Virus record (IMG/VR): IMGVR_UViG_3300031787_007614
Span: 300,405 to 364,404 of that record
Reading direction: 5' to 3' (one strand)
Length of the DNA: 64,000 nt
Shown here: positions 13,495-47,655 of the stretch, in pieces
Layout: every line of letters begins with the position of its first letter
Numbering within the stretch: the stretch's first letter is position 1
Notes under the pieces: model-generated
The model's database searches: none
Seen by the model: only the letters and a program-made list of their open reading frames with translations
What the model was told of the DNA's origin: nothing
Translations under genes and position numbers: made by a program

Positions 13495-14404
13495 CGTTGC
13501 AGACTTAGATTGCATATACTTGAGCTATGACGAACCACAACGAGAAGAATTTTGGGTCAAGATTAGGAATATGGTTCCTTGGGCACAACGGGTGGATGGC
13601 GTTAAAGGGAGCGATGCAGCTCACAAAGCGGCAGCCTCAGCGTCTAGTACGGATAGATTCATTCTCATCGATGGCGACAATCTCCCCGACCCGGCGTTTT
13701 TTAATCAGACACTTGTTTTTCCTAATGAAGAATATGAGAGTGCTGTGTTCCGGTGGCGGGCACGTAACCATATCAACGGACTGATGTATGGCAATGGTGG
13801 CCTGAGCTCTTGGACCAAAGACTTTGTGGGCAACATGCGTACACACGAAGCCACAGATGGTCGCGCAGAAACTGAAGTGGAGTTTTGCTTTGATCCATTG
13901 TACTGGCCCATGCATGACTGCTACTCCAATACCTATCCCAATGGATCACCATTCCATGCCTGGCGTGCAGGGTTCCGTGAAGGTGTCAAGATGTGCCTGC
14001 AACGTGGGCGCCGACCCACAGTGGAAGAATTTAAAAATCAGGTGCTACGTAATCTTGACAACTTGACTATCTGGCACAACATTGGCACAGACGTTGATCA
14101 TGGAGAATGGGCCATTGCTGGCAGCCGCCAAGGCACATACATGACCATGCTCACAAACTGGGATTACAAGCAGGTGCAAGATTTTGCTGCACTAGAGGCG
14201 CTGTGGAATACTGTGAAAGATTCAAACCCTCGCATACTCAGCAATCAACTGGGCCCAGAACTGGGCACACAATTGGATCTTCCAATGGGTATATTGGAAG
14301 CAGAACAATCAGCGTTCTTCAAATATCACTATCGGTCAGACTGGCGCAATCGTGGTGTTATGACACGCGAGATTGATGTAATTAGACAACAAGAAGGATG
14401 GTAA
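13481..14404 (+). CDS. GT2-like glycosyltransferase domain protein
   Basis: IYLSYDEP...RVDGVKG..AAHKAAA...FILIDGD; AWRAGFREGVKM. Confidence 0.55.
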   Translation: MKQIDVADLDCIYLSYDEPQREEFWVKIRNMVPWAQRVDGVKGSDAAHKAAASASSTDRFILIDGDNLPDPAFFNQTLVFPNEEYESAVFRWRARNHINGLMYGNGGLSSWTKDFVGNMRTHEATDGRAETEVEFCFDPLYWPMHDCYSNTYPNGSPFHAWRAGFREGVKMCLQRGRRPTVEEFKNQVLRNLDNLTIWHNIGTDVDHGEWAIAGSRQGTYMTMLTNWDYKQVQDFAALEALWNTVKDSNPRILSNQLGPELGTQLDLPMGILEAEQSAFFKYHYRSDWRNRGVMTREIDVIRQQEGW

Positions 14405-14405
14405 T

Positions 14406-15326
14406 ATGAAAAAATTAATCGCAACACTTTTGGCCGCACTGGCATTGCATGCTCAGGCAGAAGTAATCACAATCAAGTCTCCATATGGCGCACAGCATGC
14501 AGGGCATGCAGCATTGTATAAAATTATGGAAAAAGCCAATACTGCTCAAACTCAGTACGACTTTATACTAGAGTTAAAACCTGGTGCTAACGGAGTGTTA
14601 GCACTAAAAGATCTGGATCGTGCGCCAGCTACATCGCTGGGATTAATTCATGCTGGCTATGTGCAGAATACCATGGACAATTTGCTAAACGAAACAGACT
14701 ATGTTCCGGTTATGGCTCTTGGCGACGCCTGTTGGTTTGTTGCAAGCAACCAGGGTAATGAACAACAGGGTCTACGCAGTTTATATGGTAACCGTTTAGA
14801 TCTGGTCATGGGCGGTGTTGGCATTGGAACAGCAGCACATTTGACTTCTATGGAGATTGCTGAAAAAATAAATCACCCCATTAGGTTTGTTAGTTTTAAA
14901 TCAGGTGCAGAAGCAAATATTGTATTGGCTGGAGAAAACGGAGTACATGTCAGCATGATGTCAAGCAACGAATTTACAAATTTAAAAACACGGAACCCTC
15001 GCTTGCAAAGACTAGCTGTACATTGTGAACGCAGACTGCCCGAAGCTCCGGGAGTTGCTACCACAAAACAACAAGGCATCACAGCACCGTATGTCTTTAA
15101 CACAATTGTGGCCAATGTACACATGCCCGCAACCAAACTACAAGAAATCAAAGTTATATTAAACAATGCTGTGGTTGCAGTTGGTCAAGATCAAATACTG
15201 GCCATGAGCGATTTTAATCCTCCTAATTTTAGAAATCAAAGTGTTGATGACTATCACAAAGAAAAAGTGCGTGTTATGAAAGCAGCATTGATCAAACACC
15301 GTGCGGCAATTGAGGCTGCAAAATGA
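14406..15326 (+). CDS. Bug/TctC-like periplasmic substrate-binding protein
   Basis: Signal peptide MKKLIATLLAALALHAQA; KPGANGVLA, GxGTAAHL, V.FKSGAEA, VPT-like VATTKQQG motifs. Confidence 0.75.
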   Translation: MKKLIATLLAALALHAQAEVITIKSPYGAQHAGHAALYKIMEKANTAQTQYDFILELKPGANGVLALKDLDRAPATSLGLIHAGYVQNTMDNLLNETDYVPVMALGDACWFVASNQGNEQQGLRSLYGNRLDLVMGGVGIGTAAHLTSMEIAEKINHPIRFVSFKSGAEANIVLAGENGVHVSMMSSNEFTNLKTRNPRLQRLAVHCERRLPEAPGVATTKQQGITAPYVFNTIVANVHMPATKLQEIKVILNNAVVAVGQDQILAMSDFNPPNFRNQSVDDYHKEKVRVMKAALIKHRAAIEAAK

Positions 15327-16408
15327 AACGAGTGGTACTGGCTGTCGCTGACCCTTGGAACTATTTTAATCAATGGCCAGGATACAGCTTGTCCATTATC
15401 AATCCAGACGGCGATGCCAACCGCAAACAATATCTCTTAGACAATTTAGACTGGAGTTTGTTGGTCACATCTGATGGCGTACAACATCGTGATGGTGGTG
15501 ATTACGGCGACGAGAAAATGGTAATGTACACTTCAGGCACAACCGGAGATTCAAAGTTTTTTAGTTATTCCACCACTCAGGTACAGCATGTTGTTGATAA
15601 CATAATTGCCAGCTACGAATTAACAGCCAATGATCGATTTTTGAGCGTTATGCCACTGTGGCATGGCCACGGACATATCCTAAACTATGTTGTTGCAACC
15701 GCTGGCATGCAAGTACACCATGTTCGACCGCCTGACTTGAAAAAACAAATAGAATTCAGCCCAACCTGGGTGTCTGCAATTCCTGACATACTTAGAGTAA
15801 TGTCACGCACTCAAAAATTCCCCGACTTGCGATTTGCTAGATCAGCCAGTGTTGCATTGCCCAACCAAGTGTTTGATGATTTAAAAAGATCATTTAATAC
15901 CCCAATCATTGAATCGTTTGGCATGTCTGAAGCCTGTAGCCATTGCTTTACCAATCCGTTGTATGGTGAACAACGTATAGGAACCATTGGACTTCCTGAC
16001 GGGATTGACGCAGACATACGCAACGGTAGCTTATGGCTGCGCGGCCCACAATGTCACACATCAGATTGGTTTGATACTGAAGACTTGGCTGAGCAAGACT
16101 CTGCAGGATACTACAAAATACTAGGACGTAGATCAGATCGACTGACCTTGCATGGCATCAAACTAAATCCATTGAGCATAGAAAATCAACTGTACAATCA
16201 CATACCACAACTGGATGAAGTTGTGGTGTTTGGCGAAAACAAAATGATGTGTGTGTACACCGGCAATGTTTTGCCCAATCAAGTGCGACAAGCATTAACT
16301 GATATTTCCACACACTGTAACCCCAAGTTCCTTAAACAAGTTGAAAGCATACCTAAAAATACCGCAGGCAAAGTATCACGTTCACTGCTAAAGGAAATTT
16401 ACAATTGA
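15323..16408 (+). CDS. AMP-binding (acyl-CoA/acyl-AMP ligase) family enzyme
   Basis: YTSGTTGDSK P-loop, FGMSE, GRRSD, IPKNTAGKVSR. Confidence 0.85.
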   Translation: MKRVVLAVADPWNYFNQWPGYSLSIINPDGDANRKQYLLDNLDWSLLVTSDGVQHRDGGDYGDEKMVMYTSGTTGDSKFFSYSTTQVQHVVDNIIASYELTANDRFLSVMPLWHGHGHILNYVVATAGMQVHHVRPPDLKKQIEFSPTWVSAIPDILRVMSRTQKFPDLRFARSASVALPNQVFDDLKRSFNTPIIESFGMSEACSHCFTNPLYGEQRIGTIGLPDGIDADIRNGSLWLRGPQCHTSDWFDTEDLAEQDSAGYYKILGRRSDRLTLHGIKLNPLSIENQLYNHIPQLDEVVVFGENKMMCVYTGNVLPNQVRQALTDISTHCNPKFLKQVESIPKNTAGKVSRSLLKEIYN

Positions 16409-17115
16409 ATATCCTAGTGAACGGACCCAGTGTGTCACGAGGCCCTGGCAGTTGGCCGTACTTGTTGCAAGAGCACTACAACGCCGACCTTGTTAATTTG
16501 AGTCAGGCAGGGGCTGGAAATACTTACATTCATGAAACTACCGTGGCTGAACTTGCACAACGATCTTATGATCTAGTGGCAATCATGTGGGGAGATCAAC
16601 AACGACTAGATATCAAAGTAAAAAACATTGATTATTTTCATGATACTATCTACACCAGCAAATTCCAAAAGGCCATGAATGATTGGCCAGAGAAGATAGT
16701 AGAGCCTGTTAACGACCAAGACTATGTGCAAGACAACTGGGTGTTTGGTTGCGGATACATCAATACCAAAGATCCTTGTTTGGTAGAACTGTTTGATTCG
16801 TATTACCAGCATACTGACATTGACTCTCGATACTTTAGCAGTATTATCAAAATGATCAGTCTCCAGGGCGTACTTAAAAATCTTGGAATAAAATATGTAT
16901 TTTGCGGCACCCGCACATTGCCTTTGTTAAAACGCTACGAACATTTGTACAATCTATTAGATTGGAATTGTATAATCAATGATTTTACTCCCCATCACGT
17001 GGCCTACCGGGACAATTGCTGGGAAGCTGATCAACTACACCCTGGCCCGGCCGCACACCAAGAATTTGCCAAACACATGATTGCTCAACTTCAACAAAGA
17101 CATATACTTACATAA
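16405..17115 (+). CDS. SGNH/GDSL-like hydrolase
   Basis: NGPSVS block I, NLSQAGAGN block II, C-terminal DQLHPGPAAH. Confidence 0.6.
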   Translation: MNILVNGPSVSRGPGSWPYLLQEHYNADLVNLSQAGAGNTYIHETTVAELAQRSYDLVAIMWGDQQRLDIKVKNIDYFHDTIYTSKFQKAMNDWPEKIVEPVNDQDYVQDNWVFGCGYINTKDPCLVELFDSYYQHTDIDSRYFSSIIKMISLQGVLKNLGIKYVFCGTRTLPLLKRYEHLYNLLDWNCIINDFTPHHVAYRDNCWEADQLHPGPAAHQEFAKHMIAQLQQRHILT

Positions 17116-18101
17116 TGATTAATATTCCGCACATTGATCTTAAGATTTGGAATCCTGAATTCAAAACAATTGAAATTGTGTCAGAGTTACAACAGCACGG
17201 CAATGTGTCTATTGGCATTGACGGCGAAGGCAGTGATTGTGAAACGCTGGGCTTGTATAAACTATTGGATGCAGTATGCAGTAACTTAGGTTACACACCC
17301 GGCGCCATAAGCATACACACTTGCAATCAATTAGAACACCATTCTTGCTATAAAATTATTAAACATCCGCCGTTGTACATACCCAGCGGGCAACAGTTTG
17401 CATCTCAGCACACGCTACCTGAGAAACGCTGGGACGCAATCAAGCACTTTGGAATTTTTGTTGGACGTAGCAGTTGGCAACGATTGTGGATGGCCAGTCA
17501 CACATGGAGCAACTACGGCGACATAACCTCCATGACTTATCATTACGATAGTAGCGTCGATTATCATCGCACACACTTGAGCTTTGATGAACTAGCATAT
17601 CAAATAGGATTGCCTAATGCAGTTAACACAGCAGGCAAGTTCATGCAACAATTGCCCATCAAGAACGAATCTGTTGATAGCTATCCTATACTAACTCCAG
17701 CACACTTTGCTATTGCTAAACTGTATCCTGATTTTTTTGTGGAAATAGTATGCGAAACTTTTCTAAGCGGCAACAGCTTTTACCCCACGGAAAAAACCTG
17801 GAGACCGTTTATATGTCGTACACCGTTTTTGACTCTGGGCCCACGTGGCTTTTTGGCAAACTTACACAAGCTGGGATTTAGAACATTCTCTCAGTGGTGG
17901 GACGAAAGCTACGACCAAGATGCTGACCTAGACAATGGGCGAATAGCCATCAAGTGTATACAACAAACACAACAACGCTTGAGCATACTCAGCACACAGG
18001 AGCTTGAAGGCATGTACATTGACATGAAAGATACTTTAGAACATAACTATCAACACTTCATGCAGTTAAAAGAAACGGACTTTGTAAAAATATGGCCATG
18101 A
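17115..18101 (+). CDS. 'TEK-motif' putative glycosyltransferase (GT10-like C-terminus)
   Basis: EIVCETF...PTEKTWRP....PF......L..LGFRTF...WDESYD. Confidence 0.5.
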   Translation: MINIPHIDLKIWNPEFKTIEIVSELQQHGNVSIGIDGEGSDCETLGLYKLLDAVCSNLGYTPGAISIHTCNQLEHHSCYKIIKHPPLYIPSGQQFASQHTLPEKRWDAIKHFGIFVGRSSWQRLWMASHTWSNYGDITSMTYHYDSSVDYHRTHLSFDELAYQIGLPNAVNTAGKFMQQLPIKNESVDSYPILTPAHFAIAKLYPDFFVEIVCETFLSGNSFYPTEKTWRPFICRTPFLTLGPRGFLANLHKLGFRTFSQWWDESYDQDADLDNGRIAIKCIQQTQQRLSILSTQELEGMYIDMKDTLEHNYQHFMQLKETDFVKIWP

Positions 18102-19498
18102 ACAAAGGCGATGAAACAGTAGACAACAAGAGTCGGTTCCTAAACTCTGCTGAAAAAATGGCAGAGAACCTAGGCCCTGCGCTGTGCCTGGCCAAATGGA
18201 AGCAAGTGAGCCTGCACCTGCCCACAGGACTTAACAATAGTTGTTACCATCCGCCATTGCACAAGATACCCGTAGAAAACTTAGCTACCAATCCAGGATC
18301 CTTGCACAACACACCGCACAAGAAAGCGCAACGTGTGATGATGCTACGCAACGAAAAGCCCGCAGAGTGCGAGTACTGCTGGAACATGGAAGCGGAAAAC
18401 AAACTGAGTGACAGGCACTATCGTTCAGGCGAGCCTTGGGCCGCAGTGGACTTTGAAAAGATCCAGAACTCAACAGGAGAAGAAAGTGACGTTATCCCTA
18501 GCTACGTTGAGGTTAATTTTAATAATGTTTGTAATCTCATGTGCAGTTATTGCAGTCCGCAATTCTCTAGCAGCTGGCAACAAGAAGTGGATCGATCAGG
18601 CGGCTACCCTACTGCTCGTGTTCACAATGATCCTGGGCATTTTGGTGGAGATCGCCGGGTTATACCAGTTAGAGAGCATAACCCTTATGTAGACGCATTC
18701 TGGGAGTGGTGGCCTACTTTGTACCCAGAACTGGTGCATTTCCGCATGACTGGGGGCGAACCCTTGTTAGACAAGAACACATACAGAGTGTTTGATCATG
18801 TGTTGGAGAACCCATCTGCCAAACTACATTTGAATGTAACATCAAACTTCTCAGTGGATGAAAAGTCATGGCAGAAGTACTTGGGGTATGTCAAGCAGTT
18901 GTGCGACGGGCGCATAGAACACTTCATGCAGTACGTGAGTTTAGACGGCTGGGGCTCACAAGCAGAATACATGCGTCACGGTATGGACTTCAATTTACTA
19001 TGGGACAGGGTAAATCAATTTCTAACAGAAGTACCCAGCTACAACAGTCTAACGTTTATTGTGACCATGAACAATCTATCAGTAACCAGCTTGGAAAACC
19101 TGTTTGCTGGCATTCTAGGTCTGCGTAAAACCTATAGCAAAACCTATCAACGTGTGTGGTTTGATACACCTGTACTACGCGAACCGGCTTGGCAGAGTTT
19201 GCAAATACTGCCAGAAAGCTATGCTGAACGACTGGAATATCTCTGGGCGTGGATGATACGTTGGACAGAAACTGCCGAAGATCCATTCCACGGATTCAAA
19301 GACTACGAACTTGCTAGACTGGACAGAGACATTGCATGGATGCGAGCAGGCCAAGGACAAGATCATTCCGCAGCAAAGGCAGACTTTTATAGATTCTTTC
19401 GAGAACACGATCGCCGCAGAGGCACTGACTTTTTAAAGACCTTTCCAGAAATGAAAAGCTGGTGGGCAGAATGTGCATATCATGCTAGGAACACATAA
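18092..19498 (+). CDS. Twitch/SPASM-domain radical SAM protein
   Basis: CNLMCSYC, GGEP, N-terminal C..KW, CYH and CEYC. Confidence 0.85.
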   Translation: MAMNKGDETVDNKSRFLNSAEKMAENLGPALCLAKWKQVSLHLPTGLNNSCYHPPLHKIPVENLATNPGSLHNTPHKKAQRVMMLRNEKPAECEYCWNMEAENKLSDRHYRSGEPWAAVDFEKIQNSTGEESDVIPSYVEVNFNNVCNLMCSYCSPQFSSSWQQEVDRSGGYPTARVHNDPGHFGGDRRVIPVREHNPYVDAFWEWWPTLYPELVHFRMTGGEPLLDKNTYRVFDHVLENPSAKLHLNVTSNFSVDEKSWQKYLGYVKQLCDGRIEHFMQYVSLDGWGSQAEYMRHGMDFNLLWDRVNQFLTEVPSYNSLTFIVTMNNLSVTSLENLFAGILGLRKTYSKTYQRVWFDTPVLREPAWQSLQILPESYAERLEYLWAWMIRWTETAEDPFHGFKDYELARLDRDIAWMRAGQGQDHSAAKADFYRFFREHDRRRGTDFLKTFPEMKSWWAECAYHARNT

Positions 19499-20585
19499 GC
19501 TCATAGTAGACGAATGGGCCGAAGTCTGGGACTTGCTCAAGCCATATGCTGACAGCAGTTTTTGGCAGTTGCCCAGCTTGGATCCTGCCAATGTGTATGT
19601 TGTTGGCCGTGTGATATTGAAAGACAACTGGCAGACAATAACTGACTGGGCCACTCAGCACCCTGGACGCATTGTGTTCTCCAACCCTGCAGAAGGATCA
19701 GAAACCATACTGCTACAGCTCAAGCGACTGCGCATTGCTGACTTGGTCCAAGACGGGCGCATAGGACTGTTGACGTCTGGGGATTTAGAACCAGGGTGGA
19801 GCTATTGTAAAACAGACTGTTACTTTTCAAACATAGTGGAATACACAGAAAACAAATCGGCGCAACTACAAGCTGACATGGATTCAAAAGCGCATCGCCC
19901 ATATGATTTTCTTTTTTTAAATGGCCGCCTGCGCCCACATCGCAAAGCACTGATAGACGGCCTGCGTGAAAATCAGCTGTTGGATCATGCATTATGGACC
20001 AACCTGGGCAGTTCTGTTGAAATGGCATTTACTTCTGCACTGCAAACCAATCAGCTTGAGCCTATTAGACTGTTGCCCCCAGAATATGAAATTGAACGTG
20101 CTGTACCCAACATGGAATCAGCGTATGCACACAGTTTTTGCAAGCATCATTTGTTTGGCAATACCTGGGGCGATGCCATTGTTAATCCTGCTTGCTACAC
20201 AAGCACATGGTTCTCAGTGGTAACAGAAACCATATTTGATTACCCGCACACATTTAGAACAGAAAAGATATGGAAGCCCATATTAATGGCACACCCATTT
20301 GTGGCAGCTGCCAACAGGGGTTACTTGCGAGACTTGCGCAACGCAGGATTCCGCACGTTCCACAACTACATCGACGAATCCTACGACCAAATTGATTGTC
20401 CAAGCAAGCGAATAGATAGTATAATAGCAACAATTGGCGAGATCTGTCAGAACGGTGCTGCTGAATTCTGGACAGCCGCCCAGGATATCTGTAAATATAA
20501 TCAACAGCACCTAGTGGAGCACAATCAATTGGAACGTGCCCAACTCCCCATCAATTTAGAAAAGTATTTAGATGAACGATCTTGA
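19473..20585 (+). CDS. 'TEK-motif' putative glycosyltransferase
   Basis: SVVTET...RTEKIWKPI...HPF...GFRTF...IDESYD. Confidence 0.5.
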   Translation: MHIMLGTHKLIVDEWAEVWDLLKPYADSSFWQLPSLDPANVYVVGRVILKDNWQTITDWATQHPGRIVFSNPAEGSETILLQLKRLRIADLVQDGRIGLLTSGDLEPGWSYCKTDCYFSNIVEYTENKSAQLQADMDSKAHRPYDFLFLNGRLRPHRKALIDGLRENQLLDHALWTNLGSSVEMAFTSALQTNQLEPIRLLPPEYEIERAVPNMESAYAHSFCKHHLFGNTWGDAIVNPACYTSTWFSVVTETIFDYPHTFRTEKIWKPILMAHPFVAAANRGYLRDLRNAGFRTFHNYIDESYDQIDCPSKRIDSIIATIGEICQNGAAEFWTAAQDICKYNQQHLVEHNQLERAQLPINLEKYLDERS

Positions 20586-21903
20586 GTTCCGTCAGCAAGT
20601 ATTAGACCCTCTCTCAGCCAGCTTTTGTGCGGCAAAATGGTATAACGCAACCATTTGGTTAGGAAGTGGACAGACCACAAGTTGTCATCACCCGCCAGCT
20701 CATTTGATCGACAAAGATAAAGTCAGCATCAACCCTAGGCTACTGCACAATACTGATCAAAAGAAGGCAGATCGCCAACAAATGATCAACGGGGAGCGTC
20801 CCCCTGGCTGTGAGTACTGTTGGAAAATAGAAGACATGGGTCGCAATGCCATTTCAGACCGTGTGTATAAGAGTAAGATATATCCCATAGAGGCATTACA
20901 TGAAGCTAGAAATACACCATACACTGAAGACGTCAACCTCCGTACACTTGAGATCGCTTTTGATCGCACTTGTCAGTTTGCTTGTAGCTATTGTAATCCA
21001 GCTTTCAGTTCAACATGGGTTAAAGACATCCGACGCAACGGAGCTTACCAGAACTTGGTCAGTGATGGTCGCAACCATTTTACCCATGATCATGCTAACG
21101 CACAACTTTGGGATTATGGAGAACACAATCCTTACATTGATGCATTTTTTAAGTGGTGGGAGTCGGATCTGCATCGCACACTGCAAGAGCTCCGTATCAC
21201 AGGAGGAGAGCCCCTCATGTCTGGTCACACATGGAAGCTCATTGACTGGTTTCGAACAAATTCAGGCAAGAGTTCAACACGCCTGGCTATCAACAGTAAC
21301 CTAGGCACAGACGTAGACATTGACCGCTTGCTAGATGCAACGCAAAACATGGCAATTGACATATACACTTCAAACGAAGCTGTGGGTGTGCAAGCAGAGT
21401 ACATACGCGACGGGTTGGTCTGGGCGGACTGGATGAACAATGTCAACCGCTTGTTAAGTTCCAAGCAGTTCCGTAGCATACATGTGATGTGTACCATCAA
21501 TGCCCTGTGCCTAGACAGCTTGGATCAATTGCTAGAGTGCATAGTGAAATGGAAGCTGGAGTATGGGCGTGATGCTATATCATTCACACTAAACATCTTG
21601 CGTTTTCCCAGCTTTCAAAGTCCGTTGATACTGCCTGCGGAGTTGAAAACACACTACAAAACAGTGTTGGAAACTTGGCTCACAAATCACAGCCACAGTG
21701 AATACCTGCACGAACACGAAATCAATCATTTACAAAGATTGATTGATTACCTGGATGTGGTGAAAACACCGCATTCAGACACATTTGAAATGCCCAAGCT
21801 ATTGAATGATTTCAAACAATTCCACACACAGTATGACCAGCGTCGCAACAAAGACTTTGGCACAGCGTTCCCAAATCTGCAGGCCTGGTATAATTCACTA
21901 TAA
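20572..21903 (+). CDS. Twitch/SPASM-domain radical SAM protein
   Basis: CQFACSYC, GGEP, N-terminal CHH and CEYC. Confidence 0.85.
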   Translation: MNDLEFRQQVLDPLSASFCAAKWYNATIWLGSGQTTSCHHPPAHLIDKDKVSINPRLLHNTDQKKADRQQMINGERPPGCEYCWKIEDMGRNAISDRVYKSKIYPIEALHEARNTPYTEDVNLRTLEIAFDRTCQFACSYCNPAFSSTWVKDIRRNGAYQNLVSDGRNHFTHDHANAQLWDYGEHNPYIDAFFKWWESDLHRTLQELRITGGEPLMSGHTWKLIDWFRTNSGKSSTRLAINSNLGTDVDIDRLLDATQNMAIDIYTSNEAVGVQAEYIRDGLVWADWMNNVNRLLSSKQFRSIHVMCTINALCLDSLDQLLECIVKWKLEYGRDAISFTLNILRFPSFQSPLILPAELKTHYKTVLETWLTNHSHSEYLHEHEINHLQRLIDYLDVVKTPHSDTFEMPKLLNDFKQFHTQYDQRRNKDFGTAFPNLQAWYNSL

Positions 21904-21910
21904 TTCACTA
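21891..21910 (+). repeat. 10-bp tandem duplication TAATTCACTA x2
   Basis: Read directly at the gene junction. Confidence 0.9.
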
Positions 21911-21912
21911 TA

Positions 21913-23172
21913 ATGTCATATAATTACAACTCTACAGATCTAGTAAGACCCACAGAATTAACTGAGCGTGAGGAATTCTTACTAAAAGATTCAAAGACAT
22001 TTTGCATTTATCCCTGGATCCATTTGCACGCCTATCCCACAGGCGAGGCATATCCCTGCTGTCATGCTGAAATGAAGCCAGGCATAGTAGGCAACTGTAG
22101 AACAAATACCTTAGAAGAAATATGGCAGGATGCACCCATGCAGAAGCTACGTGCAGACATGCTGAGCGAAACGCCACACGCTGCCTGCACACGTTGTTAT
22201 GAGCAGGAAGAATCAGGATTCTTTTCAGGCCGTAAGAGTGCCAACAAACATCACGGACATCACATAAAGAAGCTGGATCAAAATCCTTTTGAAATGACCT
22301 ACTGGGACATTCGTTTCTCAAACTTGTGCAATCTAAAATGCCGTAGCTGCGGATACATATTCAGCTCACAATGGTATCAGGATCAAGCCAAACTTGCTGG
22401 CGGCGACTGGAAAGCCCGCAACACAGTGCTAAACTATGCAGGGCGTACTGAAACTGACATGTGGGAACAATTAAAGCCTCATTTGGACTATGTGGAACAG
22501 ATCTACTTTGCTGGCGGTGAACCCTTGCTTATGGCGGAACACTACAATATTCTAGACGAGCTGGTGCGAAGAAAACGCTTTGACGTTAGACTCATATACA
22601 ACACCAACTTCACACACACGGATCTCAAGGGTCGTTCAGTATTTGAATACTGGCGCCAGTTCGATTCAGTTGCTGTGGGTGCCAGCCTGGATGCGTCGGG
22701 CGCACGTGGGGAATACATTAGAAAAGGCACAGACTGGGCCGTAGTAGAACAGAACAGACGTGATATGTTGCGTGTGTGCCCTGAAGTGGATTTTTACATT
22801 TCACCTACCTTGAGCATAATGAATGCCTGGCACCTGCCTGATTTCCACCGTGACTGGGTGGAAAAAGGCCTGATCCGCGCACAGGATTTAAATATAAATA
22901 TCCTACAAGATCCTGCGCACTATAGAATAGACATTGCCACAGCCGAATACAAACACTCACTCACAGCACTGTATCAAAATCATATCCATTGGCTTAAAGG
23001 TCAGGACCCGCTAAATCGTGCCACACAAGGCTTTGAATCAGCCATTACCTTTATGATGGCCACAGACAACACACACTTGATAGATACATTCTGGCGCAAA
23101 ACAAATGAACTAGATTCAATAAGAAATGAATCAATATTGGATATAATTCCAGAATTGGCGGCACTAAAATGA
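21913..23172 (+). CDS. Twitch/SPASM-domain radical SAM protein
   Basis: CNLKCRSC, GGEP, N-terminal PCC and CTRC. Confidence 0.85.
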   Translation: MSYNYNSTDLVRPTELTEREEFLLKDSKTFCIYPWIHLHAYPTGEAYPCCHAEMKPGIVGNCRTNTLEEIWQDAPMQKLRADMLSETPHAACTRCYEQEESGFFSGRKSANKHHGHHIKKLDQNPFEMTYWDIRFSNLCNLKCRSCGYIFSSQWYQDQAKLAGGDWKARNTVLNYAGRTETDMWEQLKPHLDYVEQIYFAGGEPLLMAEHYNILDELVRRKRFDVRLIYNTNFTHTDLKGRSVFEYWRQFDSVAVGASLDASGARGEYIRKGTDWAVVEQNRRDMLRVCPEVDFYISPTLSIMNAWHLPDFHRDWVEKGLIRAQDLNINILQDPAHYRIDIATAEYKHSLTALYQNHIHWLKGQDPLNRATQGFESAITFMMATDNTHLIDTFWRKTNELDSIRNESILDIIPELAALK

Positions 23173-24386
23173 ATATTCCACACGATCAATTTTGCGTATT
23201 GCCCTGGGTGAGTTTAGAAGCCTCTCCCATTGGCACTGTACGCCCATGTTGTCTGGCAGATGATGAACTGACGGATGACTCTGGCACAAAGTTCTCGCTA
23301 TTGAATGCTAACTTTGCTGACATACAAAACTCACGTGCAATGACACGCCTGCGTGAACAGTTTCTTGCAGGCGAAAAGCCACAGACCTGCCGCAAGTGCT
23401 GGATGGAAGAACGTGCTGGCCGCACATCAAAACGCATGCACACCTTGGACAGAATGAAACACATGGGCATATCAGGAGAATGGACCACTGACGCCAAGCC
23501 GCTGATGTTCCTGGATTTGAAGCTGGGCAACATCTGCAATTTAAAATGTCGTATATGCGGATCATGGTCATCAAGCCAATTTGCCACAGAAGAATTAAAT
23601 GACATGCATCCAGATGACGATAAGAAAAAGACATTTCCCTATCAGATGCTGCGAGCAGGTGCGTGGCCCAGGGAAAATCAATCATTTTGGACAGAAATTG
23701 ATGCCTGTTTAAATGACATACGCTACATTGAATTTACAGGTGGCGAGCCATTCATGATTGATCAGCACTTTGACATGTTGCAGGGCATTGTGGATCGCGG
23801 AATTGCACATCAAGTGGAAATACACTACAACACAAATGGCACACAATGGCCTGCTCGCGGCCCGGACATCTGGCGCCATTTTAAAACAGTAGAAGTGGCG
23901 TTCTCAATAGATGATGTGGGTGAACGCTTTGAATATCAACGCACCAATGCAGACTGGGCATTGGTGCTGGACACAATCACAAGTTTTCAATATCTTAGAG
24001 ATCAACTGCCCAACCTGCGTTTACAATGCTGTAGTACCGTGAATGTGTTTAATGTGCGGTACATTGATCAACTAGCACACTGGATAGCACTGCAACGCTT
24101 TGACTTTGTGTACTGGAACATGATGCATGATGCCTGGTACTTTTCAATTGCCACACTGCCTGACACAGCCAAAGCTGCTGTCACAGAACACCTACGTTCA
24201 GCAGATGTGCCCGCACAATATCGTGAGGAGTTTGATAGAATCACAGACTTTATGAATGGGGGTGCGTCAACGGACGGCTTTATGTTGCGAATGAAAGTAC
24301 GTGATTTAGATCGCAAAAGAAAACAAAATTTACGTGATGTAGCGCCAGAATTTGCTGAAATAATTGGGTATGACTATGACCAGTAA
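23169..24386 (+). CDS. Twitch/SPASM-domain radical SAM protein
   Basis: CNLKCRIC, GGEP, N-terminal PCC and CRKC. Confidence 0.85.
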   Translation: MNIPHDQFCVLPWVSLEASPIGTVRPCCLADDELTDDSGTKFSLLNANFADIQNSRAMTRLREQFLAGEKPQTCRKCWMEERAGRTSKRMHTLDRMKHMGISGEWTTDAKPLMFLDLKLGNICNLKCRICGSWSSSQFATEELNDMHPDDDKKKTFPYQMLRAGAWPRENQSFWTEIDACLNDIRYIEFTGGEPFMIDQHFDMLQGIVDRGIAHQVEIHYNTNGTQWPARGPDIWRHFKTVEVAFSIDDVGERFEYQRTNADWALVLDTITSFQYLRDQLPNLRLQCCSTVNVFNVRYIDQLAHWIALQRFDFVYWNMMHDAWYFSIATLPDTAKAAVTEHLRSADVPAQYREEFDRITDFMNGGASTDGFMLRMKVRDLDRKRKQNLRDVAPEFAEIIGYDYDQ

Positions 24387-25383
24387 TCTGGTATTGATGC
24401 ACGACACCAGACTGGTTCCTGCCAATTTGTCAAGGCATTTTCCTGTGGACTATGAGTTTTTTGATCCTGGCAAAACATATCCCAGCAACACAGTTTTTGT
24501 TTATGATCATTATCTCAGTGAAATTGCAGTCAAACAGCATCTTGACAGTCATCTGCAAGCTGGCTACAGAGTAATATACGACAACAAAAATGAACATTGG
24601 TTTACCACTGACCAATGGTGGATTGTTGAGCTGCTACAAAAATATCCACAACAACACCTTTTGTTTAGTTTGGGATCACAGCCTGGCGCATTGCCTGGAC
24701 TCAGAGTGCAGGCTGTGCCTGCTTGGATATGGCTGCGTTGCCGAGACTATTGGGAAAAATTGAACTATCACAATATTGCATATACTCCAACTGCACGGTA
24801 TAAAACATTGTGTATGATCAACTACACACGACCCTGGCGAGACCTGGTGTGGCAAGCATTGAATCCCATGGAGGCAGATGTGATGCGTAGTTATTTGTCC
24901 CAGGGGATCAGCATGCCCGACGATGTTACAGGTGATGGACACTTGTGGCAGGTAAATCCACGTTGGTTTCATATTTCTGCAATGAGCTTGGTGTGCGAAA
25001 GTTCAATTGGTGCTGTTTCTGGAGAAATTTCAGTCACTGCACCGTCAGGTGTGTTTGTGAGCGAAAAAAGTCTAAAGCCCATGGCCATGCAACATCCATT
25101 TATTGTGGTAGCAACCCCGGGTACCCTAGCAGAGATACAGAGTTTTGGATTTGAAACATTCCCAGAGTTATGGGACGAAAGCTACGATTCAATTGTGGAC
25201 TTTGGTCAGCGATTAAACGTCATTATGCAACAAGTGCAACAGTTTGATACAGCACAATTAAACCAGCTGGTAGTGCAACAAAAACTCCAACACAATCAGC
25301 ACAGGATTTTTGATCCTGCGGTAACACAGCAATTGCTACAGCAACAGGTGTTGGATCCCATATTAGAATTTTTAAATGAATAA
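24364..25383 (+). CDS. 'TEK-motif' putative glycosyltransferase
   Basis: VCES...VSEKSLKPM..QHPF...GFETF..LWDESYD. Confidence 0.5.
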   Translation: MGMTMTSNLVLMHDTRLVPANLSRHFPVDYEFFDPGKTYPSNTVFVYDHYLSEIAVKQHLDSHLQAGYRVIYDNKNEHWFTTDQWWIVELLQKYPQQHLLFSLGSQPGALPGLRVQAVPAWIWLRCRDYWEKLNYHNIAYTPTARYKTLCMINYTRPWRDLVWQALNPMEADVMRSYLSQGISMPDDVTGDGHLWQVNPRWFHISAMSLVCESSIGAVSGEISVTAPSGVFVSEKSLKPMAMQHPFIVVATPGTLAEIQSFGFETFPELWDESYDSIVDFGQRLNVIMQQVQQFDTAQLNQLVVQQKLQHNQHRIFDPAVTQQLLQQQVLDPILEFLNE

Positions 25384-26665
25384 ACCTGATACCATGTGCC
25401 TGGCACCTTGGGTGCATACCTATCTAAGCCCGCAAACTGAACGGCGCATGTGCTGTGCGTCACGCGAGCCTGCACAGAATTTTCGGCAGTACATAGACAC
25501 TGAGTCAGGTACTGGTCAGTATATTCCTGTCACACTTGAAGAACATTGGAATTCAAATCACATGCGATCAGTGCGTCGCAGAATGATGGCCGGAGAAACT
25601 TTACCTGAATGCGAAGTATGCAATGACCGACTCCTTAACACTAGCGTTTACCGCACCTACTTCGATCATTTATTTCAGCACAAACTGCCAGAAGTATACG
25701 CTAACACACAGCCCGATGGCACTACGACTATGGAACCTGTTTCATGGGATTATAGGTTCTCAAACTTATGTAACTTCAAATGCAGAACCTGCGGAGATAT
25801 GCTTTCAAGTGCCTGGGAGAGTGAACAAAAACAGAACAACATGGTCAACTGGGCTGATCCTAAAAACAATTGGATGCGAGACAGTATACGTGACAGCATC
25901 TCCCAATTTCAGGATAGTCAAATTGAAGCCGAATTTGCTGCCGCCGTTGAACAACATCGTGTAGAAGAAATCTACTGGGTGGGCGGAGAGCCGCTAATGT
26001 ACGAACAGCATTGGCGCCACATGAAAAGAATTGTTGAACTAGGAGATGGACCACGTGTTTATGCTAGATATAATACTAATCTCAGCCGTGTGCGTTACGG
26101 CGGTGTGGATCTATTTGATGATATCCTGGCGCACATTCGCGATTGGCAAATATGTGCTTCCCTGGATGGAACTGAGCAGATCGGGGAATATATTCGTACA
26201 GGATTGGATTATGCACAGTTCTGTCGTAATTTTGAACACGGACTCAAATACGCTACCAACCCTAGACAGATGCGTCTTGACTTTACCCTCACACTGCCCG
26301 GCATGTTCGAGACTGGCGCAATGGAAAAGTTATCACAGACGTATGGGGTACAATTGTTAGCCAAAGTGATATTCAGCTTTAGTCCAGACATTGTTATGAG
26401 TCCACTTGCGCTGCCCAGACACTTGTTGGATCCATGGGTTGACGAACTAGCAGGCCGCTCCGCAGGTGACATGCGTGATGTACTGCTACAATTAAAGAAC
26501 CGTCCATGCTTTGAGGAACAATGGCCGGATACATATCGCGCAGGACTTGCAAAAGGCAAAGCTCGTGTGTTACAATTAGAAAGCATACGCACACAGAAGA
26601 TTACTATGGCAGAAATACTTGCTCAAAGACCAGCAGTGCTAGAATGGTGGAATAAAATTGCTTGA
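25376..26665 (+). CDS. Twitch/SPASM-domain radical SAM protein
   Basis: CNFKCRTC, GGEP, N-terminal MCC and CEVC. Confidence 0.85.
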   Translation: MNKPDTMCLAPWVHTYLSPQTERRMCCASREPAQNFRQYIDTESGTGQYIPVTLEEHWNSNHMRSVRRRMMAGETLPECEVCNDRLLNTSVYRTYFDHLFQHKLPEVYANTQPDGTTTMEPVSWDYRFSNLCNFKCRTCGDMLSSAWESEQKQNNMVNWADPKNNWMRDSIRDSISQFQDSQIEAEFAAAVEQHRVEEIYWVGGEPLMYEQHWRHMKRIVELGDGPRVYARYNTNLSRVRYGGVDLFDDILAHIRDWQICASLDGTEQIGEYIRTGLDYAQFCRNFEHGLKYATNPRQMRLDFTLTLPGMFETGAMEKLSQTYGVQLLAKVIFSFSPDIVMSPLALPRHLLDPWVDELAGRSAGDMRDVLLQLKNRPCFEEQWPDTYRAGLAKGKARVLQLESIRTQKITMAEILAQRPAVLEWWNKIA

Positions 26666-27719
26666 TCACATTGAAATAGACCTACGCGGACAAAACAGCC
26701 TACTAACTGTGCATATAGATGTGGCGGACAACACACTAAGTCGCAAATGGCTAACCGCGCTAAATGACATCATTAGAACTGATCTTCATTTGGAAAAGAA
26801 TTACTGTTGGATGGGATGGACTGAAAGTGAACGAAATGCACAATACCTTTGTGAGCAAATTAATGCTAGTATTGATCACATCAATCGAAGTGGTATTGGC
26901 TATTGTATTGATTGTGATGCTTATACTGTAGAGAATACCATTGAGCCAGGAATCATTGGCACCAATCTAATCATCGGTGGCGTGGTGCATGAAAAAATGA
27001 ACAATCTACACAGGTATTTTGAAGACCTACAAGGGTGGTCAGGTGGCATTTCAAATTATTATACTCGTGCAGATCCTGCTACACGCTGGCACATACGTCA
27101 ACTAAATCTCCTGTGTCATGAATATGAAAGTCTTGTATTGAGCATGCGCAAGGCTGTGCATGCCCCTGAATGGCGCAGACCCTCACAGTTGATGTGTTGG
27201 CTTAATGCACCGCGTTTTGCACTAGAACCCGCGGACTATGAATTGTTTGGCGTAGAAACCATCAACAGAACTCTAGGCGGTGTTTATTTGGGTGTAAATA
27301 AAGCAGTTGGCAAACATCACTGGGAGGTGTTCAATGATGAAGGTAGGGATTCGCGTGTTGGCGAGCTTGTTACTACAGGACTGCGTGCTCAAACTGAAGC
27401 CGCTGGCGACTTTGATATCGAATGGGCCCGTGACCCAGGAGCATATCACTGGCAAATCAAAAAGTTACAAGAATTCCGCGCCTGGCTATTGGACAATGGG
27501 TTTGATCCAGAGGACAAAAGTCTCACCATTGGTCACCCAAAGGTGGCACAAGTTGACGTGATGCGAACATTTGGAACAACGGATTATGAAAAGATTTGGG
27601 CGCAGTTGGCTCAACATCTTGATGTGTTGAGCATACGTACCGGGTGGGGCGAAGCTACATACAACTATCGCTGGAGCGATCCAGACTATCATGAACAGCA
27701 AATAAGGAGATTGAAATGA
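26658..27719 (+). CDS. Hypothetical protein
   Basis: 353-aa coupled ORF; no recognised motif. Confidence 0.7.
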   Translation: MLDHIEIDLRGQNSLLTVHIDVADNTLSRKWLTALNDIIRTDLHLEKNYCWMGWTESERNAQYLCEQINASIDHINRSGIGYCIDCDAYTVENTIEPGIIGTNLIIGGVVHEKMNNLHRYFEDLQGWSGGISNYYTRADPATRWHIRQLNLLCHEYESLVLSMRKAVHAPEWRRPSQLMCWLNAPRFALEPADYELFGVETINRTLGGVYLGVNKAVGKHHWEVFNDEGRDSRVGELVTTGLRAQTEAAGDFDIEWARDPGAYHWQIKKLQEFRAWLLDNGFDPEDKSLTIGHPKVAQVDVMRTFGTTDYEKIWAQLAQHLDVLSIRTGWGEATYNYRWSDPDYHEQQIRRLK

Positions 27720-27817
27720 ATTGGATTAGACAAATTTGGGATAGAATTACACTAGAGTATCGTTATCGTAAAAAACTAAAAGAGCTACGCAAAAGAGATC
27801 CTTTTATCTACAAATGA
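27716..27817 (+). CDS. 33-aa basic peptide (not in ORF track)
   Basis: MNWIRQIWDRITLEYRYRKKLKELRKRDPFIYK; ATGA overlaps at both ends. Confidence 0.75.
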   Translation: MNWIRQIWDRITLEYRYRKKLKELRKRDPFIYK

Positions 27818-28461
27818 AAAATCAGTTACTCACAATAGGTGATAGCTTTACACATGGTGACGAATTGTCAGATGTGTATCAAGCCTGGCCCTATCGTCTG
27901 TCAGACAAACTAGGATACGAAGTCCACAATCTTGGACAGTCAGGGTGCAGTAACGCTAGTATTTTGCGTAGAACATTAGAAGAACTTGCGACCAATCATT
28001 ATGATTTAGTTATTATAGGGTGGACTTATCCGGGTAGAATTGAATGGAAAGATGACATTGGCATAGCGTATGATTTATGGCCAGGTGTGCCCAACGATAC
28101 TAAATTTTTTAAAGATCATCCTTGGAGAGTTGATTTTTTAAACTTTATAAGTCAACATCACAATTCTGCTTATCTATACCAACAGTATCTGATACAAACA
28201 ATTTTGTTGCAATCGTTTTGCCAAGTCAACAGCATTGATTATAGAATGTTAGATGTACAATGGCACAATTACTACAGAAAAGTTGGATCAGAAATGCATG
28301 ATAAGTTAGAAGCAAAAATAGATACAACAAAATTTATAGGTTGGCAAAAGTTTGGTATGAGAGAACTAGTGGCTGATTTACCAAAAGGTCCTCAAAATCA
28401 TCCGCTAGAACAAGGACATGAGAGAATAGCAAATGAAATCGCAAAACATATTGGGAATTAG
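27814..28461 (+). CDS. SGNH/GDSL-like hydrolase
   Basis: IGDSFTHG, NLGQSGCSN, NHPLEQGH. Confidence 0.7.
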   Translation: MKNQLLTIGDSFTHGDELSDVYQAWPYRLSDKLGYEVHNLGQSGCSNASILRRTLEELATNHYDLVIIGWTYPGRIEWKDDIGIAYDLWPGVPNDTKFFKDHPWRVDFLNFISQHHNSAYLYQQYLIQTILLQSFCQVNSIDYRMLDVQWHNYYRKVGSEMHDKLEAKIDTTKFIGWQKFGMRELVADLPKGPQNHPLEQGHERIANEIAKHIGN

Positions 28462-30606: not shown

Positions 30607-30625
30607 AAACATTGGTGTTAATATA

Positions 30626-42747: not shown

Positions 42748-42785
42748 ACAGATATTTAATATATAAACATCTGACGGAAATGTTT

Positions 42786-43990: not shown

Positions 43991-43991
43991 C

Positions 43992-45302: not shown

Positions 45303-45327
45303 GGGCTGTTCCTTAGTTGATGTGTAT

Positions 45328-45661: not shown

Positions 45662-45666
45662 ACTCT

Positions 45667-45724: not shown

Positions 45725-45727
45725 ATA

Positions 45728-47652: not shown

Positions 47653-47655
47653 ACC

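What the first reader, a model, noticed from the sequence alone, without database searches (positions are those of the whole stretch)
18092..26665. Array of five N-terminal-twitch radical SAM enzymes (sixth copy at 59289)
Each has an auxiliary Cys cluster before the CxxxCxxC motif, the reverse of the usual C-terminal SPASM order. The auxiliary motif varies (CC in 21913/23169/25376/59289, CYH and CHH in 18092/20572). Twitch-type rSAMs such as BtrN act on sugars, so this may be an unknown radical sugar-tailoring pathway; the substrate is not evident from sequence.
Basis: partly seen in the sequence, partly recalled or inferred. Interest (0 to 1): 0.6.

Follow-up and report, generated by a model that had tools for sequence, protein, structure and literature searches.

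The report
Phage N-twitch radical SAM enzyme array
A widespread freshwater jumbo phage carries five adjacent (nine in all) radical SAM enzymes of a catalogued but never characterised family, whose extra iron-sulfur domain sits in front of the catalytic core; they lie among sugar-building genes, so they most likely do unknown radical chemistry on a phage-made glycan.

Summary
ORFs 18092, 20572, 21913, 23169, 25376 and 59289 all match NCBIfam NF033640 (N_Twi_rSAM, "twitch domain-containing radical SAM protein") at 199-387 bits against a cut-off of 170. Each has four invariant N-terminal Cys, spaced as in the BtrN twitch domain, ahead of CxxxCxxC.

The architecture is therefore already catalogued, but I found no characterised member. 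The window belongs to a 364-kb terminally repeated phage genome with nine such genes and five other radical SAM genes.

The five-gene array keeps its order in 72-80 of 80 related phage contigs and is under purifying selection. Its conserved neighbours are GT8-like and GT2-like glycosyltransferases, a carbamoyltransferase, a StrB1-like amidinotransferase, a DegT aminotransferase and an NDP-sugar dehydratase/epimerase. GT-B glycosyltransferases are swapped in and out between the radical SAM genes.

Two unrelated cultured jumbo phages (Ralstonia RsoM2USA, Vibrio K566) and some bacterial clusters also pair the family with glycosyltransferases.

Best reading: radical tailoring of amino sugars or a glycan. 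This rests on context, not proof. Substrate, reaction and target (virion fibres, host envelope or DNA) remain open.

These are new members of a known, uncharacterised family, and the phage module has not been described. Interest is moderate to high.

The parts
18092..19498 (+). N_Twi_rSAM 1 (468 aa, 'type A'). Twitch Cys 32/51/93/96; radical SAM Cys 147/151/154.
   Evidence: NF033640 at 315 bits. Cys positions. Conserved in 77/80 related loci, with all seven Cys 77/77. 33% identical to Ralstonia phage RsoM2USA_349.
20572..21903 (+). N_Twi_rSAM 2 (443 aa, 'type A', paralogue of 18092 at 31% identity).
   Evidence: NF033640 at 297 bits..
21913..23172 (+). N_Twi_rSAM 3 (419 aa), the closest of the six to the family consensus.
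   Evidence: NF033640 at 387 bits. Pfam SPASM at residues 31-96, then Radical_SAM. AF2 model pLDDT 80. Present in 80/80 loci.
23169..24386 (+). N_Twi_rSAM 4 (405 aa). Its start overlaps the stop of the previous gene.
   Evidence: NF033640 at 329 bits. Pfam SPASM at residues 9-78. Present in 79/80 loci.
25376..26665 (+). N_Twi_rSAM 5 (429 aa).
   Evidence: NF033640 at 281 bits. Present in 72/80 loci.
59289..60413 (+). N_Twi_rSAM 6 (374 aa), isolated. It lies on the opposite strand inside a 25-gene tRNA array.
   Evidence: NF033640 at 199 bits. tRNAs.
17115..18101 (+). GT-B glycosyltransferase-like protein (GT10-like family, 13 or more paralogues in the genome). Variable cassette.
   Evidence: Paralogy and alignment A2. 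Present in only 8/80 loci.
19473..20585 (+). GT-B glycosyltransferase-like protein of the same family.
   Evidence: Present in 37/80 loci.
24364..25383 (+). GT-B glycosyltransferase-like protein of the same family (the modelled member). Variable cassette.
   Evidence: AF2 model pLDDT 68. Foldseek top hit is H. pylori alpha1,3-fucosyltransferase, and all strong hits are GT-B. All 50 best VIA rows are GT-B glycosyltransferases, Z 8-10.8. Present in 7/80 loci.
11312..11617 (+). Small conserved protein (101 aa, no Cys) at the head of the module. Function unknown.
   Evidence: Conserved in 54/80 loci, in L090 and as RsoM2USA_354.
11614..13165 (+). Two paralogous GT8-like (GT-A) glycosyltransferases (11614-12411 and 12398-13165).
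   Evidence: Profile A4 hits glycogenin (GT8) at E 9e-5. Orthologues are RsoM2USA_353/352. Present in 56-70/80 loci.
13481..14404 (+). Probable GT2-like glycosyltransferase (a lead only).
   Evidence: Atlas neighbours are named 'Glycosyltransferase 2-like'. No PDB or Pfam hit. Homologues flank the radical SAM gene in RsoM2USA (genes 350 and 348). Present in 70/80 loci.
14406..17115 (+). Variable cassette: TctC-like binding protein, AMP-binding (adenylating) enzyme, and a weakly SGNH/GDSL-like protein.
   Evidence: Pfam. Present in 8-11/80 loci.
26658..27719 (+). Conserved protein of unknown function (353 aa). Its start overlaps the end of N_Twi_rSAM 5.
   Evidence: Present in 66/80 loci; 62% identical in L093. 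No family, atlas or PHROG hit.
27814..28461 (+). DUF6071 / GDSL-like hydrolase or acyltransferase. Variable.
   Evidence: Pfam. Present in 5/80 loci.
28433..29923 (+). NodU/CmcH-type carbamoyltransferase. Always follows the radical SAM array.
   Evidence: Pfam Carbam_trans_N and Carbam_trans_C at E 1e-38 to 1e-49. Present in 66/80 loci and in L090, L093 and L097.
31294..32334 (-). Amidinotransferase.
   Evidence: Profile A5 hits StrB1 inosamine-phosphate amidinotransferase at E 4e-42, and glycine amidinotransferase at 1e-33.
32306..34676 (-). Two more GT-B (GT10-like) family members (32306-33496 and 33480-34676).
34675..38274 (+). 1,199-aa protein whose C-terminus resembles the 13481 protein. 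Conserved in distant relatives.
38246..40268 (-). DegT/DnrJ/EryC1 sugar aminotransferase (38246-39361) and NAD-dependent NDP-sugar epimerase/dehydratase (39273-40268).
   Evidence: Pfam at E 5e-53 and 3e-46. Same arrangement in L090 and L093.

Best explanation
The six ORFs are intact, selected radical SAM enzymes of family NF033640. Each has an N-terminal, fully Cys-ligated twitch [4Fe-4S] domain in front of the CxxxCxxC core.

The five arrayed copies are ancient paralogues. They form the conserved core of a phage carbohydrate-tailoring and glycosylation module.

Inferred mechanism: NDP-sugar enzymes (4,6-dehydratase/epimerase, DegT aminotransferase) supply amino-sugar precursors, and GT-A and GT-B glycosyltransferases assemble a glycan. 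Each radical SAM enzyme uses the 5'-deoxyadenosyl radical to abstract a hydrogen atom from a specific sugar C-H. The twitch cluster then acts as an electron conduit, giving BtrN-like oxidation to a keto sugar, or a related epimerisation or dehydration. Carbamoyl-, amidino- and acyl-transferases decorate the product.

What is shown: family membership, cluster motifs, conservation, and gene association. What is inferred: that the substrate is a carbohydrate, the type of reaction, and that the product decorates virion fibres or the host envelope.
For: Identity and motifs:
- NF033640 at 199-387 bits against a cut-off of 170; nine copies in the genome.
- Seven invariant Cys plus GGE across paralogues and in 100% of orthologues.
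- The N-terminal domain is homologous to the BtrN twitch domain at E 2e-5.
- The radical SAM fold is confirmed by an AF2 model of pLDDT 80, with best Z 13.1 to BlsE and 12.9 to anSME.

Selection and conservation:
- pN/pS is 0.13-0.34 with synonymous sites saturated.
- The five genes keep their order in 72-80 of 80 related phage loci.
- Orthologues of each paralogue type at 40-72% identity occur in distant contigs L090 and L093. Paralogues are only 20-31% identical to one another.

Carbohydrate context in the window:
- GT8-like pair and a GT2-like lead.
- GT-B family, with all top structural hits being glycosyltransferases.
- Carbamoyltransferase, DegT and epimerase/dehydratase.
- StrB1-like amidinotransferase.

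Independent contexts elsewhere:
- In RsoM2USA, one radical SAM gene is flanked by homologues of the GT8-like and GT2-like genes, with an epimerase nearby.
- In Vibrio phage K566, four copies are interleaved with Pfam-significant GT8 and GT4-like genes.
- Bacterial clusters hold GT2, GT4, GDSL and B12-radical SAM genes, or a sugar nucleotidyltransferase followed by nine radical SAM genes.

Support functions: the phage encodes two IscA-type Fe-S carriers and a rubrerythrin.
Against: - No member of the family has a known substrate (searches found no paper).
- Structural neighbours do not discriminate. Peptide or protein enzymes (anSME, SkfB, SuiB, CteB) tie with the sugar enzymes BlsE and DesII.
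- Relatives are often fused to TPR or Sel1 repeats, which are protein-binding modules.
- Several lone bacterial copies have no sugar genes nearby, so the family may not have a single function.
- The glycosyltransferases directly between the radical SAM genes are the variable part of the locus.
- The GT2-like call for 13481 is only a lead.
- The conserved partner 26658 is unexplained.
- Transcription is not shown.
Confidence: 0.55

Rival explanations
1. The enzymes are protein or peptide maturases. They install cross-links, epimerisations or oxidations on phage structural proteins (for example the giant fibre proteins encoded just upstream) or on an unrecognised peptide, as SPASM/twitch enzymes such as anSME, SkfB and EpeE do.
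For: - Top structural and sequence neighbours include anSME, SkfB, SuiB, CteB, TigE and EpeE.
- TPR and Sel1 fusions are common in relatives.
- The module lies directly downstream of a 4,900-aa tail-fibre-like ORF and other fibre-like genes.
- GT8 relatives such as glycogenin and NleB act on proteins.
Against: - No RRE-type peptide-recognition domain was detected; the N-terminus is taken up by the twitch domain.
- There is no room for, or sign of, a short precursor gene between the overlapping ORFs.
- The constant partners are carbohydrate and amino-group transferases.
- A single radical SAM gene in RsoM2USA is embedded between glycosyltransferase-like genes, not structural genes.
Confidence: 0.17
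2. The module hypermodifies nucleotides or phage DNA, for example a glycosylated and aminated or carbamoylated base, to evade host restriction. The radical SAM enzymes would act on a base or sugar appended to DNA.
For: - T4 beta- and alpha-glucosyltransferases, which modify DNA, are among the tied best structural matches of the GT-B family (Z 10.3 and 10.1).
- ThyX lies about 1 kb beyond the module.
- From my own knowledge, radical SAM enzymes are known in phage thymidine hypermodification and deazaguanine pathways.
Against: - Thirteen or more GT-B paralogues, plus GT-A genes and strain-variable cassettes, look like a surface-glycan locus rather than a fixed DNA modification.
- No DNA-modification hallmark, such as a pyrimidine hydroxymethylase or a DNA kinase, turned up among the window ORFs scanned against Pfam.
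- ThyX alone is ordinary dTMP synthesis.
Confidence: 0.1
3. The module makes a diffusible small molecule, for example an aminoglycoside- or aminocyclitol-like compound, or a lipid-linked product that remodels host LPS or lipid A, rather than a virion glycan.
For: - The enzyme set mirrors aminoglycoside logic: a twitch radical SAM enzyme (BtrN), a StrB1-like amidinotransferase, a TobZ/NodU-type carbamoyltransferase and a DegT/StsC-type aminotransferase.
- The window also holds a ketoacyl synthase, desaturase-like genes, a hexapeptide acyltransferase and an Asp/Asn hydroxylase.
- K566 has LpxC and PagP beside its array.
Against: - No cyclitol synthase such as a 2-deoxy-scyllo-inosose synthase was seen among the ORFs scanned.
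- The many interchangeable glycosyltransferases fit a polymer better.
- This rival overlaps the best explanation. It proposes the same chemistry with a different product and target.
Confidence: 0.15

Closest known systems
NCBIfam NF033640, N_Twi_rSAM (twitch domain-containing radical SAM protein)
   Same: Full-length matches above the curated cut-off for all six ORFs, with the same N-terminal twitch then radical SAM order.
   Different: The family is a sequence definition only. No substrate, reaction or structure is known. A conserved array of five to eight copies in phages is not part of its description as far as I could find.
BtrN (butirosin 2-deoxy-scyllo-inosamine dehydrogenase), the founding twitch enzyme
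   Same: One auxiliary cluster bound by four Cys with the same C-x17-C ... C-x2-C spacing. The twitch domains align at E 2e-5. Both are set among aminotransferase-type sugar genes.
   Different: The twitch domain is C-terminal in BtrN and N-terminal here. There is no detectable similarity beyond the generic radical SAM core. The substrate here is unknown. An extra helical region of about 100 residues lies at the C-terminus.
SPASM maturases (anSME, CteB, SuiB, SkfB) and BlsE
   Same: These are the best structural neighbours of the core barrel: Z 11.9-13.1, Foldseek E 3e-6 to 1e-4.
   Different: They carry the auxiliary domain C-terminally, mostly with two clusters (seven or eight Cys), and many have an RRE for peptide binding. 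Here there is one cluster, it is N-terminal, and there is no RRE.
Virus-encoded glycosylation islands (own knowledge, not tested here: chlorovirus and mimivirus glycan machinery, cyanophage LPS-like gene islands, mycobacteriophage virion glycosylation)
   Same: A virus carries its own NDP-sugar enzymes, aminotransferase, glycosyltransferases and decorating transferases, next to structural genes and with strain-variable content.
   Different: None of those systems is known to me to be built around multiple radical SAM enzymes. Here five to eight of them are the most conserved part of the island.
Aminoglycoside tailoring sets (StrB1 amidinotransferase, TobZ carbamoyltransferase, StsC/BtrS aminotransferase, BtrN)
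   Same: All four enzyme classes are present in the module.
   Different: No inosose or cyclitol synthase was identified. The glycosyltransferase count is far higher. Similarity is at family level only.

Membership tests
NF033640 N_Twi_rSAM | HMM score at or above the curated cut-off (170 bits) over nearly the whole model | tested here: met
   Scores of 315, 297, 387, 329, 281 and 199 bits, covering model positions about 1-398. Nine genomic copies are over the cut-off.
NF033640 N_Twi_rSAM | Twitch-type Cys cluster N-terminal to the CxxxCxxC motif | tested here: met
   Four invariant Cys precede CxxxCxxC in all nine paralogues. Pfam SPASM matches the N-terminus. Homologous to the BtrN twitch domain at E 2e-5.
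Radical SAM superfamily | CxxxCxxC cluster motif, GGE SAM-binding motif and partial TIM-barrel fold | tested here: met
   The motifs are invariant. The model matches radical SAM structures at Z up to 13.1.
Radical SAM superfamily | Reductive cleavage of SAM by a bound [4Fe-4S] cluster | not testable with these tools
   Needs anaerobic reconstitution and a 5'-deoxyadenosine assay.
SPASM subfamily (two auxiliary clusters) | Seven or eight conserved Cys in a C-terminal domain binding two extra clusters | tested here: not met
   Only four Cys are invariant outside the radical SAM motif, and they are N-terminal. No conserved C-terminal Cys motif exists across paralogues.
BtrN-like twitch dehydrogenases | C-terminal twitch domain with a fully Cys-ligated cluster, and oxidation of a sugar or cyclitol alcohol | tested here: inconclusive
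   The four-Cys site and spacing are the same. The position is N-terminal rather than C-terminal. The reaction and substrate cannot be tested here.
RiPP radical SAM maturases | RRE/PqqD-like peptide-recognition domain and an adjacent precursor-peptide gene | tested here: not met
   No RRE or PqqD hit in Pfam or NCBIfam. The ORFs overlap or abut, leaving no conserved short ORF. This does not rule out absence of an unrecognised substrate elsewhere.
GT-B glycosyltransferases (interleaved ORFs 17115, 19473, 24364, 32306, 33480) | Two-Rossmann-domain GT-B fold | tested here: met
   All 50 best VIA matches (Z 8-10.8) and all strong Foldseek matches are GT-B glycosyltransferases. The top Foldseek hit is a GT10 fucosyltransferase. 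Model pLDDT is only 68, and there is no sequence-level family hit.
GT8 glycosyltransferases (ORFs 11614, 12398) | Sequence similarity to GT8, including the N-terminal nucleotide-sugar binding region with a DxD-type motif | tested here: inconclusive
   The profile hits glycogenin at E 9e-5 over the first 100 or so residues, but no Pfam hit passes threshold. The K566 neighbours do pass Pfam GT8.

The most novel reading that the evidence does not exclude
The N-twitch radical SAM family is a large, unexplored class of carbohydrate C-H functionalising enzymes. Abundant freshwater jumbo phages would use an assembly line of five to nine of them, possibly as physically coupled pairs, to build a heavily modified, nitrogen-rich (amino, guanidino, carbamoyl) glycan or aminoglycoside-like product. 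That product has no known counterpart and would be displayed on giant virion fibres or released during infection.
Probability: 0.2. Interest if true: 0.85.

Novelty: new member of a known kind. Interest (0 to 1): 0.58.

Why it matters
NF033640 has more than 8,000 clusters at 50% identity with E at or below 1e-30, yet I found no characterised member. Any assigned reaction would annotate thousands of genes.

This phage clade offers an unusually clean entry point. It has five ancient paralogues in a fixed order with a defined set of partner enzymes. Near-identical DNA turns up in freshwater and lake metagenomes from about 15 studies.

If the product is a virion or envelope glycan, this would be the first virus glycosylation system built around radical chemistry. 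It would bear on phage adsorption, immune or defence evasion, and superinfection exclusion in lakes. A phage that carries 14 radical SAM genes, its own Fe-S carriers and a rubrerythrin is also a striking case of viral investment in oxygen-sensitive metabolism.

Tried and rejected
- Megablast of the array against 50,697 phage records found no match.
- The genome search 'relatives' is not available for a virus record.
- Literature searches for NF033640, N-terminal twitch or SPASM, radical SAM with jumbo phage, and radical SAM with carbamoyltransferase and phage found nothing relevant.
- PDB sequence searches for the GT-B family and the 13481 family were blank or noise.
- The atlas feature search for ORF 26658 gave no usable hit. 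Relaxed Pfam on the unexplained ORFs gave nothing.
- The promoter and terminator scan of 10-30 kb was not above shuffled expectation, so no operon boundaries are claimed.
- Complex prediction for 21913 with 23169 gave no verdict (score 0.00). It is evidence neither for nor against binding.
- Metatranscriptome contigs lie on parts of the array at only 90-95% identity. They may come from relatives or from DNA carry-over, so expression is not claimed.
- I considered that the CC versus CY/CH difference marks different cluster types. I rejected this because the second position is not conserved among the nine paralogues, while the four-Cys set is.
- I considered recent tandem duplication. I rejected this because paralogues are 20-31% identical, while each has 40-72% orthologues in distant phage contigs.


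Full report
**Where the window lies.** The window is bases 300405-364404 of a 364,404-bp IMG/VR virus record with direct terminal repeats, estimated to be complete. A simple ORF call gives 404 ORFs and 94% coding. The window starts inside a 4,900-aa ORF that has a T7 tail-fibre N-terminal domain and FG-GAP repeats. It also holds 25 tRNA genes. Near-identical DNA is present in freshwater and lake metagenomes from about 15 studies. IMG/VR holds 234 related loci, on contigs up to about 353 kb. This is therefore a real, widespread, uncultured freshwater jumbo phage. Megablast found no cultured relative.

**The observation.** ORFs 18092-19498, 20572-21903, 21913-23172, 23169-24386, 25376-26665 and 59289-60413 exist as described.
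- All six match NCBIfam NF033640 ("N_Twi_rSAM, twitch domain-containing radical SAM protein") over nearly the full model, at 199-387 bits against a cut-off of 170.
- Pfam puts a SPASM-type match N-terminal to Radical_SAM.
- Each protein has C-x17/18/21-C ... C-x2-C followed by CxxxCxxC. Four of the six also show the canonical C-x12/13-G-x4-C signature, read directly from the sequences.
- The genome holds three more copies over the cut-off. In an alignment of all nine, the four N-terminal Cys, the three radical SAM Cys and the GGE motif are invariant.
- Across 77-80 orthologues of each arrayed gene, all seven Cys are conserved without exception. Each paralogue also has its own extra invariant Cys in the second half of the barrel: C271, C313, C289, C288 and C260.
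- The N-terminal profile region aligns to the BtrN twitch domain (residues 167-263) at E 2e-5.
The predicted ligand set is the same in all copies, and it binds one cluster (twitch), not two (SPASM).

**Fold.** An AlphaFold2 model of the 21913 protein (pLDDT 80) shows a small N-terminal domain, the radical SAM barrel and a C-terminal helical region of about 100 residues. Its best structural matches are tied: BlsE Z 13.1, anSME 12.9, SkfB 12.6, SuiB and CteB 11.9, viperin 11.8, MoaA 11.7 and DesII 11.0. The fold places it in the SPASM/twitch neighbourhood but does not reveal the substrate.

**Are the genes functional and old?**
- The paralogues are only 20-31% identical to one another.
- Each type has orthologues at 40-72% identity in much more distant phage contigs. 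One of these (L090) has eight such genes in a row.
- In 80 related loci, the five genes are present in the same order in 72-80 loci.
- Uncorrected pN/pS against seven relatives is 0.13-0.34, with synonymous sites near saturation.
- The duplications therefore long predate this clade, and every copy is maintained by selection.
- Starts and stops of successive genes overlap or abut from 13481 to 27719.

**Neighbours.** The ORFs interleaved with the radical SAM genes (17115, 19473, 24364, and also 32306 and 33480) had no Pfam, NCBIfam or PHROG assignment.
- They belong to a family with at least 13 paralogues in this genome. The family shares a C-terminal motif, E..(T/S)EK..KP...PF...G.L..L..GF.TF...DESYD.
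- A model of 24364 (pLDDT 68) matches only GT-B glycosyltransferases. The Foldseek top hit is H. pylori alpha1,3-fucosyltransferase, and all 50 best VIA rows are GT-B (Z 8-10.8).
- Upstream, 11614 and 12398 are paralogues whose profile hits glycogenin (GT8) at E 9e-5. For 13481, the nearest atlas clusters are named "Glycosyltransferase 2-like", which is only a lead.
- Downstream lies a NodU/CmcH-type carbamoyltransferase.
- On the other strand are an amidinotransferase whose best solved relative is StrB1, the inosamine-phosphate amidinotransferase (E 4e-42), a DegT/DnrJ/EryC1 aminotransferase and an NAD-dependent NDP-sugar epimerase/dehydratase.
- Across relatives, the radical SAM genes, the GT-A-like genes, ORF 26658, the carbamoyltransferase, the amidinotransferase, the 1,199-aa protein, DegT and the epimerase are the conserved core. 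The TctC-like, AMP-binding, GDSL-like and most GT-B genes are strain-variable cassettes.

**Independent contexts.**
- Ralstonia phage RsoM2USA (343 kb) has one type-A copy, 33% identical to 18092 and 20572. It is preceded by homologues of 11312, 11614 and 12398, and flanked on both sides by homologues of 13481, with an epimerase nearby.
- Vibrio phage K566 has four copies interleaved with genes that pass Pfam GT8 (32.6 and 47.4 bits) and with a GT4-like gene, close to LpxC and PagP.
- A profile search of 1.84 billion representatives found 8,350 clusters at E 1e-30 or better.
- Sampled bacterial contexts were mixed. Two were clearly glycan-type: GT2/GT4/GDSL/TPR/B12-radical SAM, and a sugar nucleotidyltransferase followed by nine radical SAM genes. 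One sat two genes downstream of another radical SAM-SPASM gene, which abuts a PMT_2-type transferase. One had only a weak GT2 gene nearby. Two had no sugar genes at all.
- Many relatives are fused to TPR or Sel1 repeats.
- About 800-aa tandem fusions reproduce the neighbour order seen here: 21913-like + 23169-like, 18092-like + 20572-like, and 23169-like + 25376-like. This hints that neighbours work together. A complex prediction gave no verdict.

**Interpretation.** Membership in NF033640, the twitch-first architecture and functional conservation are all shown. Carbohydrate action is an inference from recurrent gene association in four independent phage lineages and some bacteria.

The four-Cys (closed) twitch site argues for an electron-transfer role, as in BtrN, rather than direct substrate ligation as in MoaA. 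This point rests on established knowledge of those two enzymes. I therefore favour hydrogen abstraction from a sugar C-H followed by oxidation, epimerisation or dehydration, feeding or following the amino-, amidino-, carbamoyl- and acyl-transfer steps.

The target is open. The position next to giant fibre genes and the strain-variable glycosyltransferase cassettes fit a virion surface glycan. Lipid A and LPS-type genes here and in K566 fit host-envelope remodelling. A DNA modification or a diffusible aminoglycoside-like product is not excluded.

The phage also has five other radical SAM genes, two IscA-type Fe-S carriers and a rubrerythrin. It has no flavodoxin or plant-type ferredoxin.

**Novelty.** The reversed domain order is already captured by a curated NCBIfam model, so the enzymes are new members of a known, uncharacterised family. 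In the held literature I found no description of the family's function or of phage arrays of it.

**Expression.** Two metatranscriptome runs hold short contigs at 90-95% identity on parts of 19545-24651. These may come from relatives or from DNA carry-over, so I do not claim expression.

Noticed in passing
window 55365-61779 (minus strand): An array of 25 tRNA genes covering most amino acids. The sixth N_Twi_rSAM gene (59289-60413, plus strand) is embedded in it on the opposite strand.
   Followed up: no
window 54825-55262 (-); G000 99115-99417 (-) and 168852-169154 (-): A rubrerythrin and two IscA/HesB-type Fe-S carrier genes. No flavodoxin or Fer2 gene was found. This suggests the phage supports and protects its 14 radical SAM enzymes.
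   Followed up: partly
window 3-7733 (+), part of G000 293435-308137: A 4,900-aa ORF with a T7 tail-fibre N-terminal domain and FG-GAP repeats. It is followed by fibre-like and repeat proteins (8524-10305, and the Ser/Thr/Ala/Gly-rich 10318-11268) directly upstream of the glycan module. These are candidate glycosylation targets.
   Followed up: partly
window 31294-32334 (-): An amidinotransferase, closest to StrB1 of streptomycin biosynthesis (E 4e-42), with two more paralogues in the genome (G000 43776-44840 and 140498-141415). This is unusual for a phage.
   Followed up: partly
whole genome; window 17115, 19473, 24364, 32306, 33480: At least 13 paralogues of an unannotated GT-B (GT10-like) family. 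Atlas structural neighbours are virus-only clusters, some fused to a methyltransferase domain.
   Followed up: partly
window 14406-17115, 24364-25383, 27814-28461, 29914-31293: Between the conserved radical SAM and transferase genes, related phages carry different cassettes. These ORFs are present in only 3-11 of 80 loci. The pattern is hypervariable, like an O-antigen locus.
   Followed up: partly
proteins P0121, P0124, P0125, P0128 (metagenomic): Single ORFs of about 800-950 aa fuse two N_Twi_rSAM units in the same order as neighbouring genes of the array. I could not tell whether these are true fusions or gene-calling read-through.
   Followed up: partly
window 40851-53494 and 62901-63872: A dense set of auxiliary metabolic genes. 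It includes ThyX, a DUF2201/VWA protein with a MoxR-type AAA ATPase, an Asp/Asn beta-hydroxylase, a fatty-acid-desaturase-like protein (six paralogues in the genome), a hexapeptide acyltransferase, two TauD dioxygenases and a ketoacyl synthase.
   Followed up: no
G000 77189-78103, 232495-233412, 193841-194758, 274822-275910, 48366-49469: Five further radical SAM genes that lack the N-terminal twitch domain; one has a C-terminal SPASM hint. An FkbM-type methyltransferase lies at G000 197831-198493, in a second glycan-like region.
   Followed up: partly
L008 (Vibrio phage K566, OZ196521.1 161548-168284): The cultured phage K566 (and K567) has four N_Twi_rSAM genes, one of them annotated only as 'hypothetical protein'. 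They are interleaved with GT8 and GT4-like genes next to LpxC and PagP. This is a tractable laboratory system for the family.
   Followed up: partly
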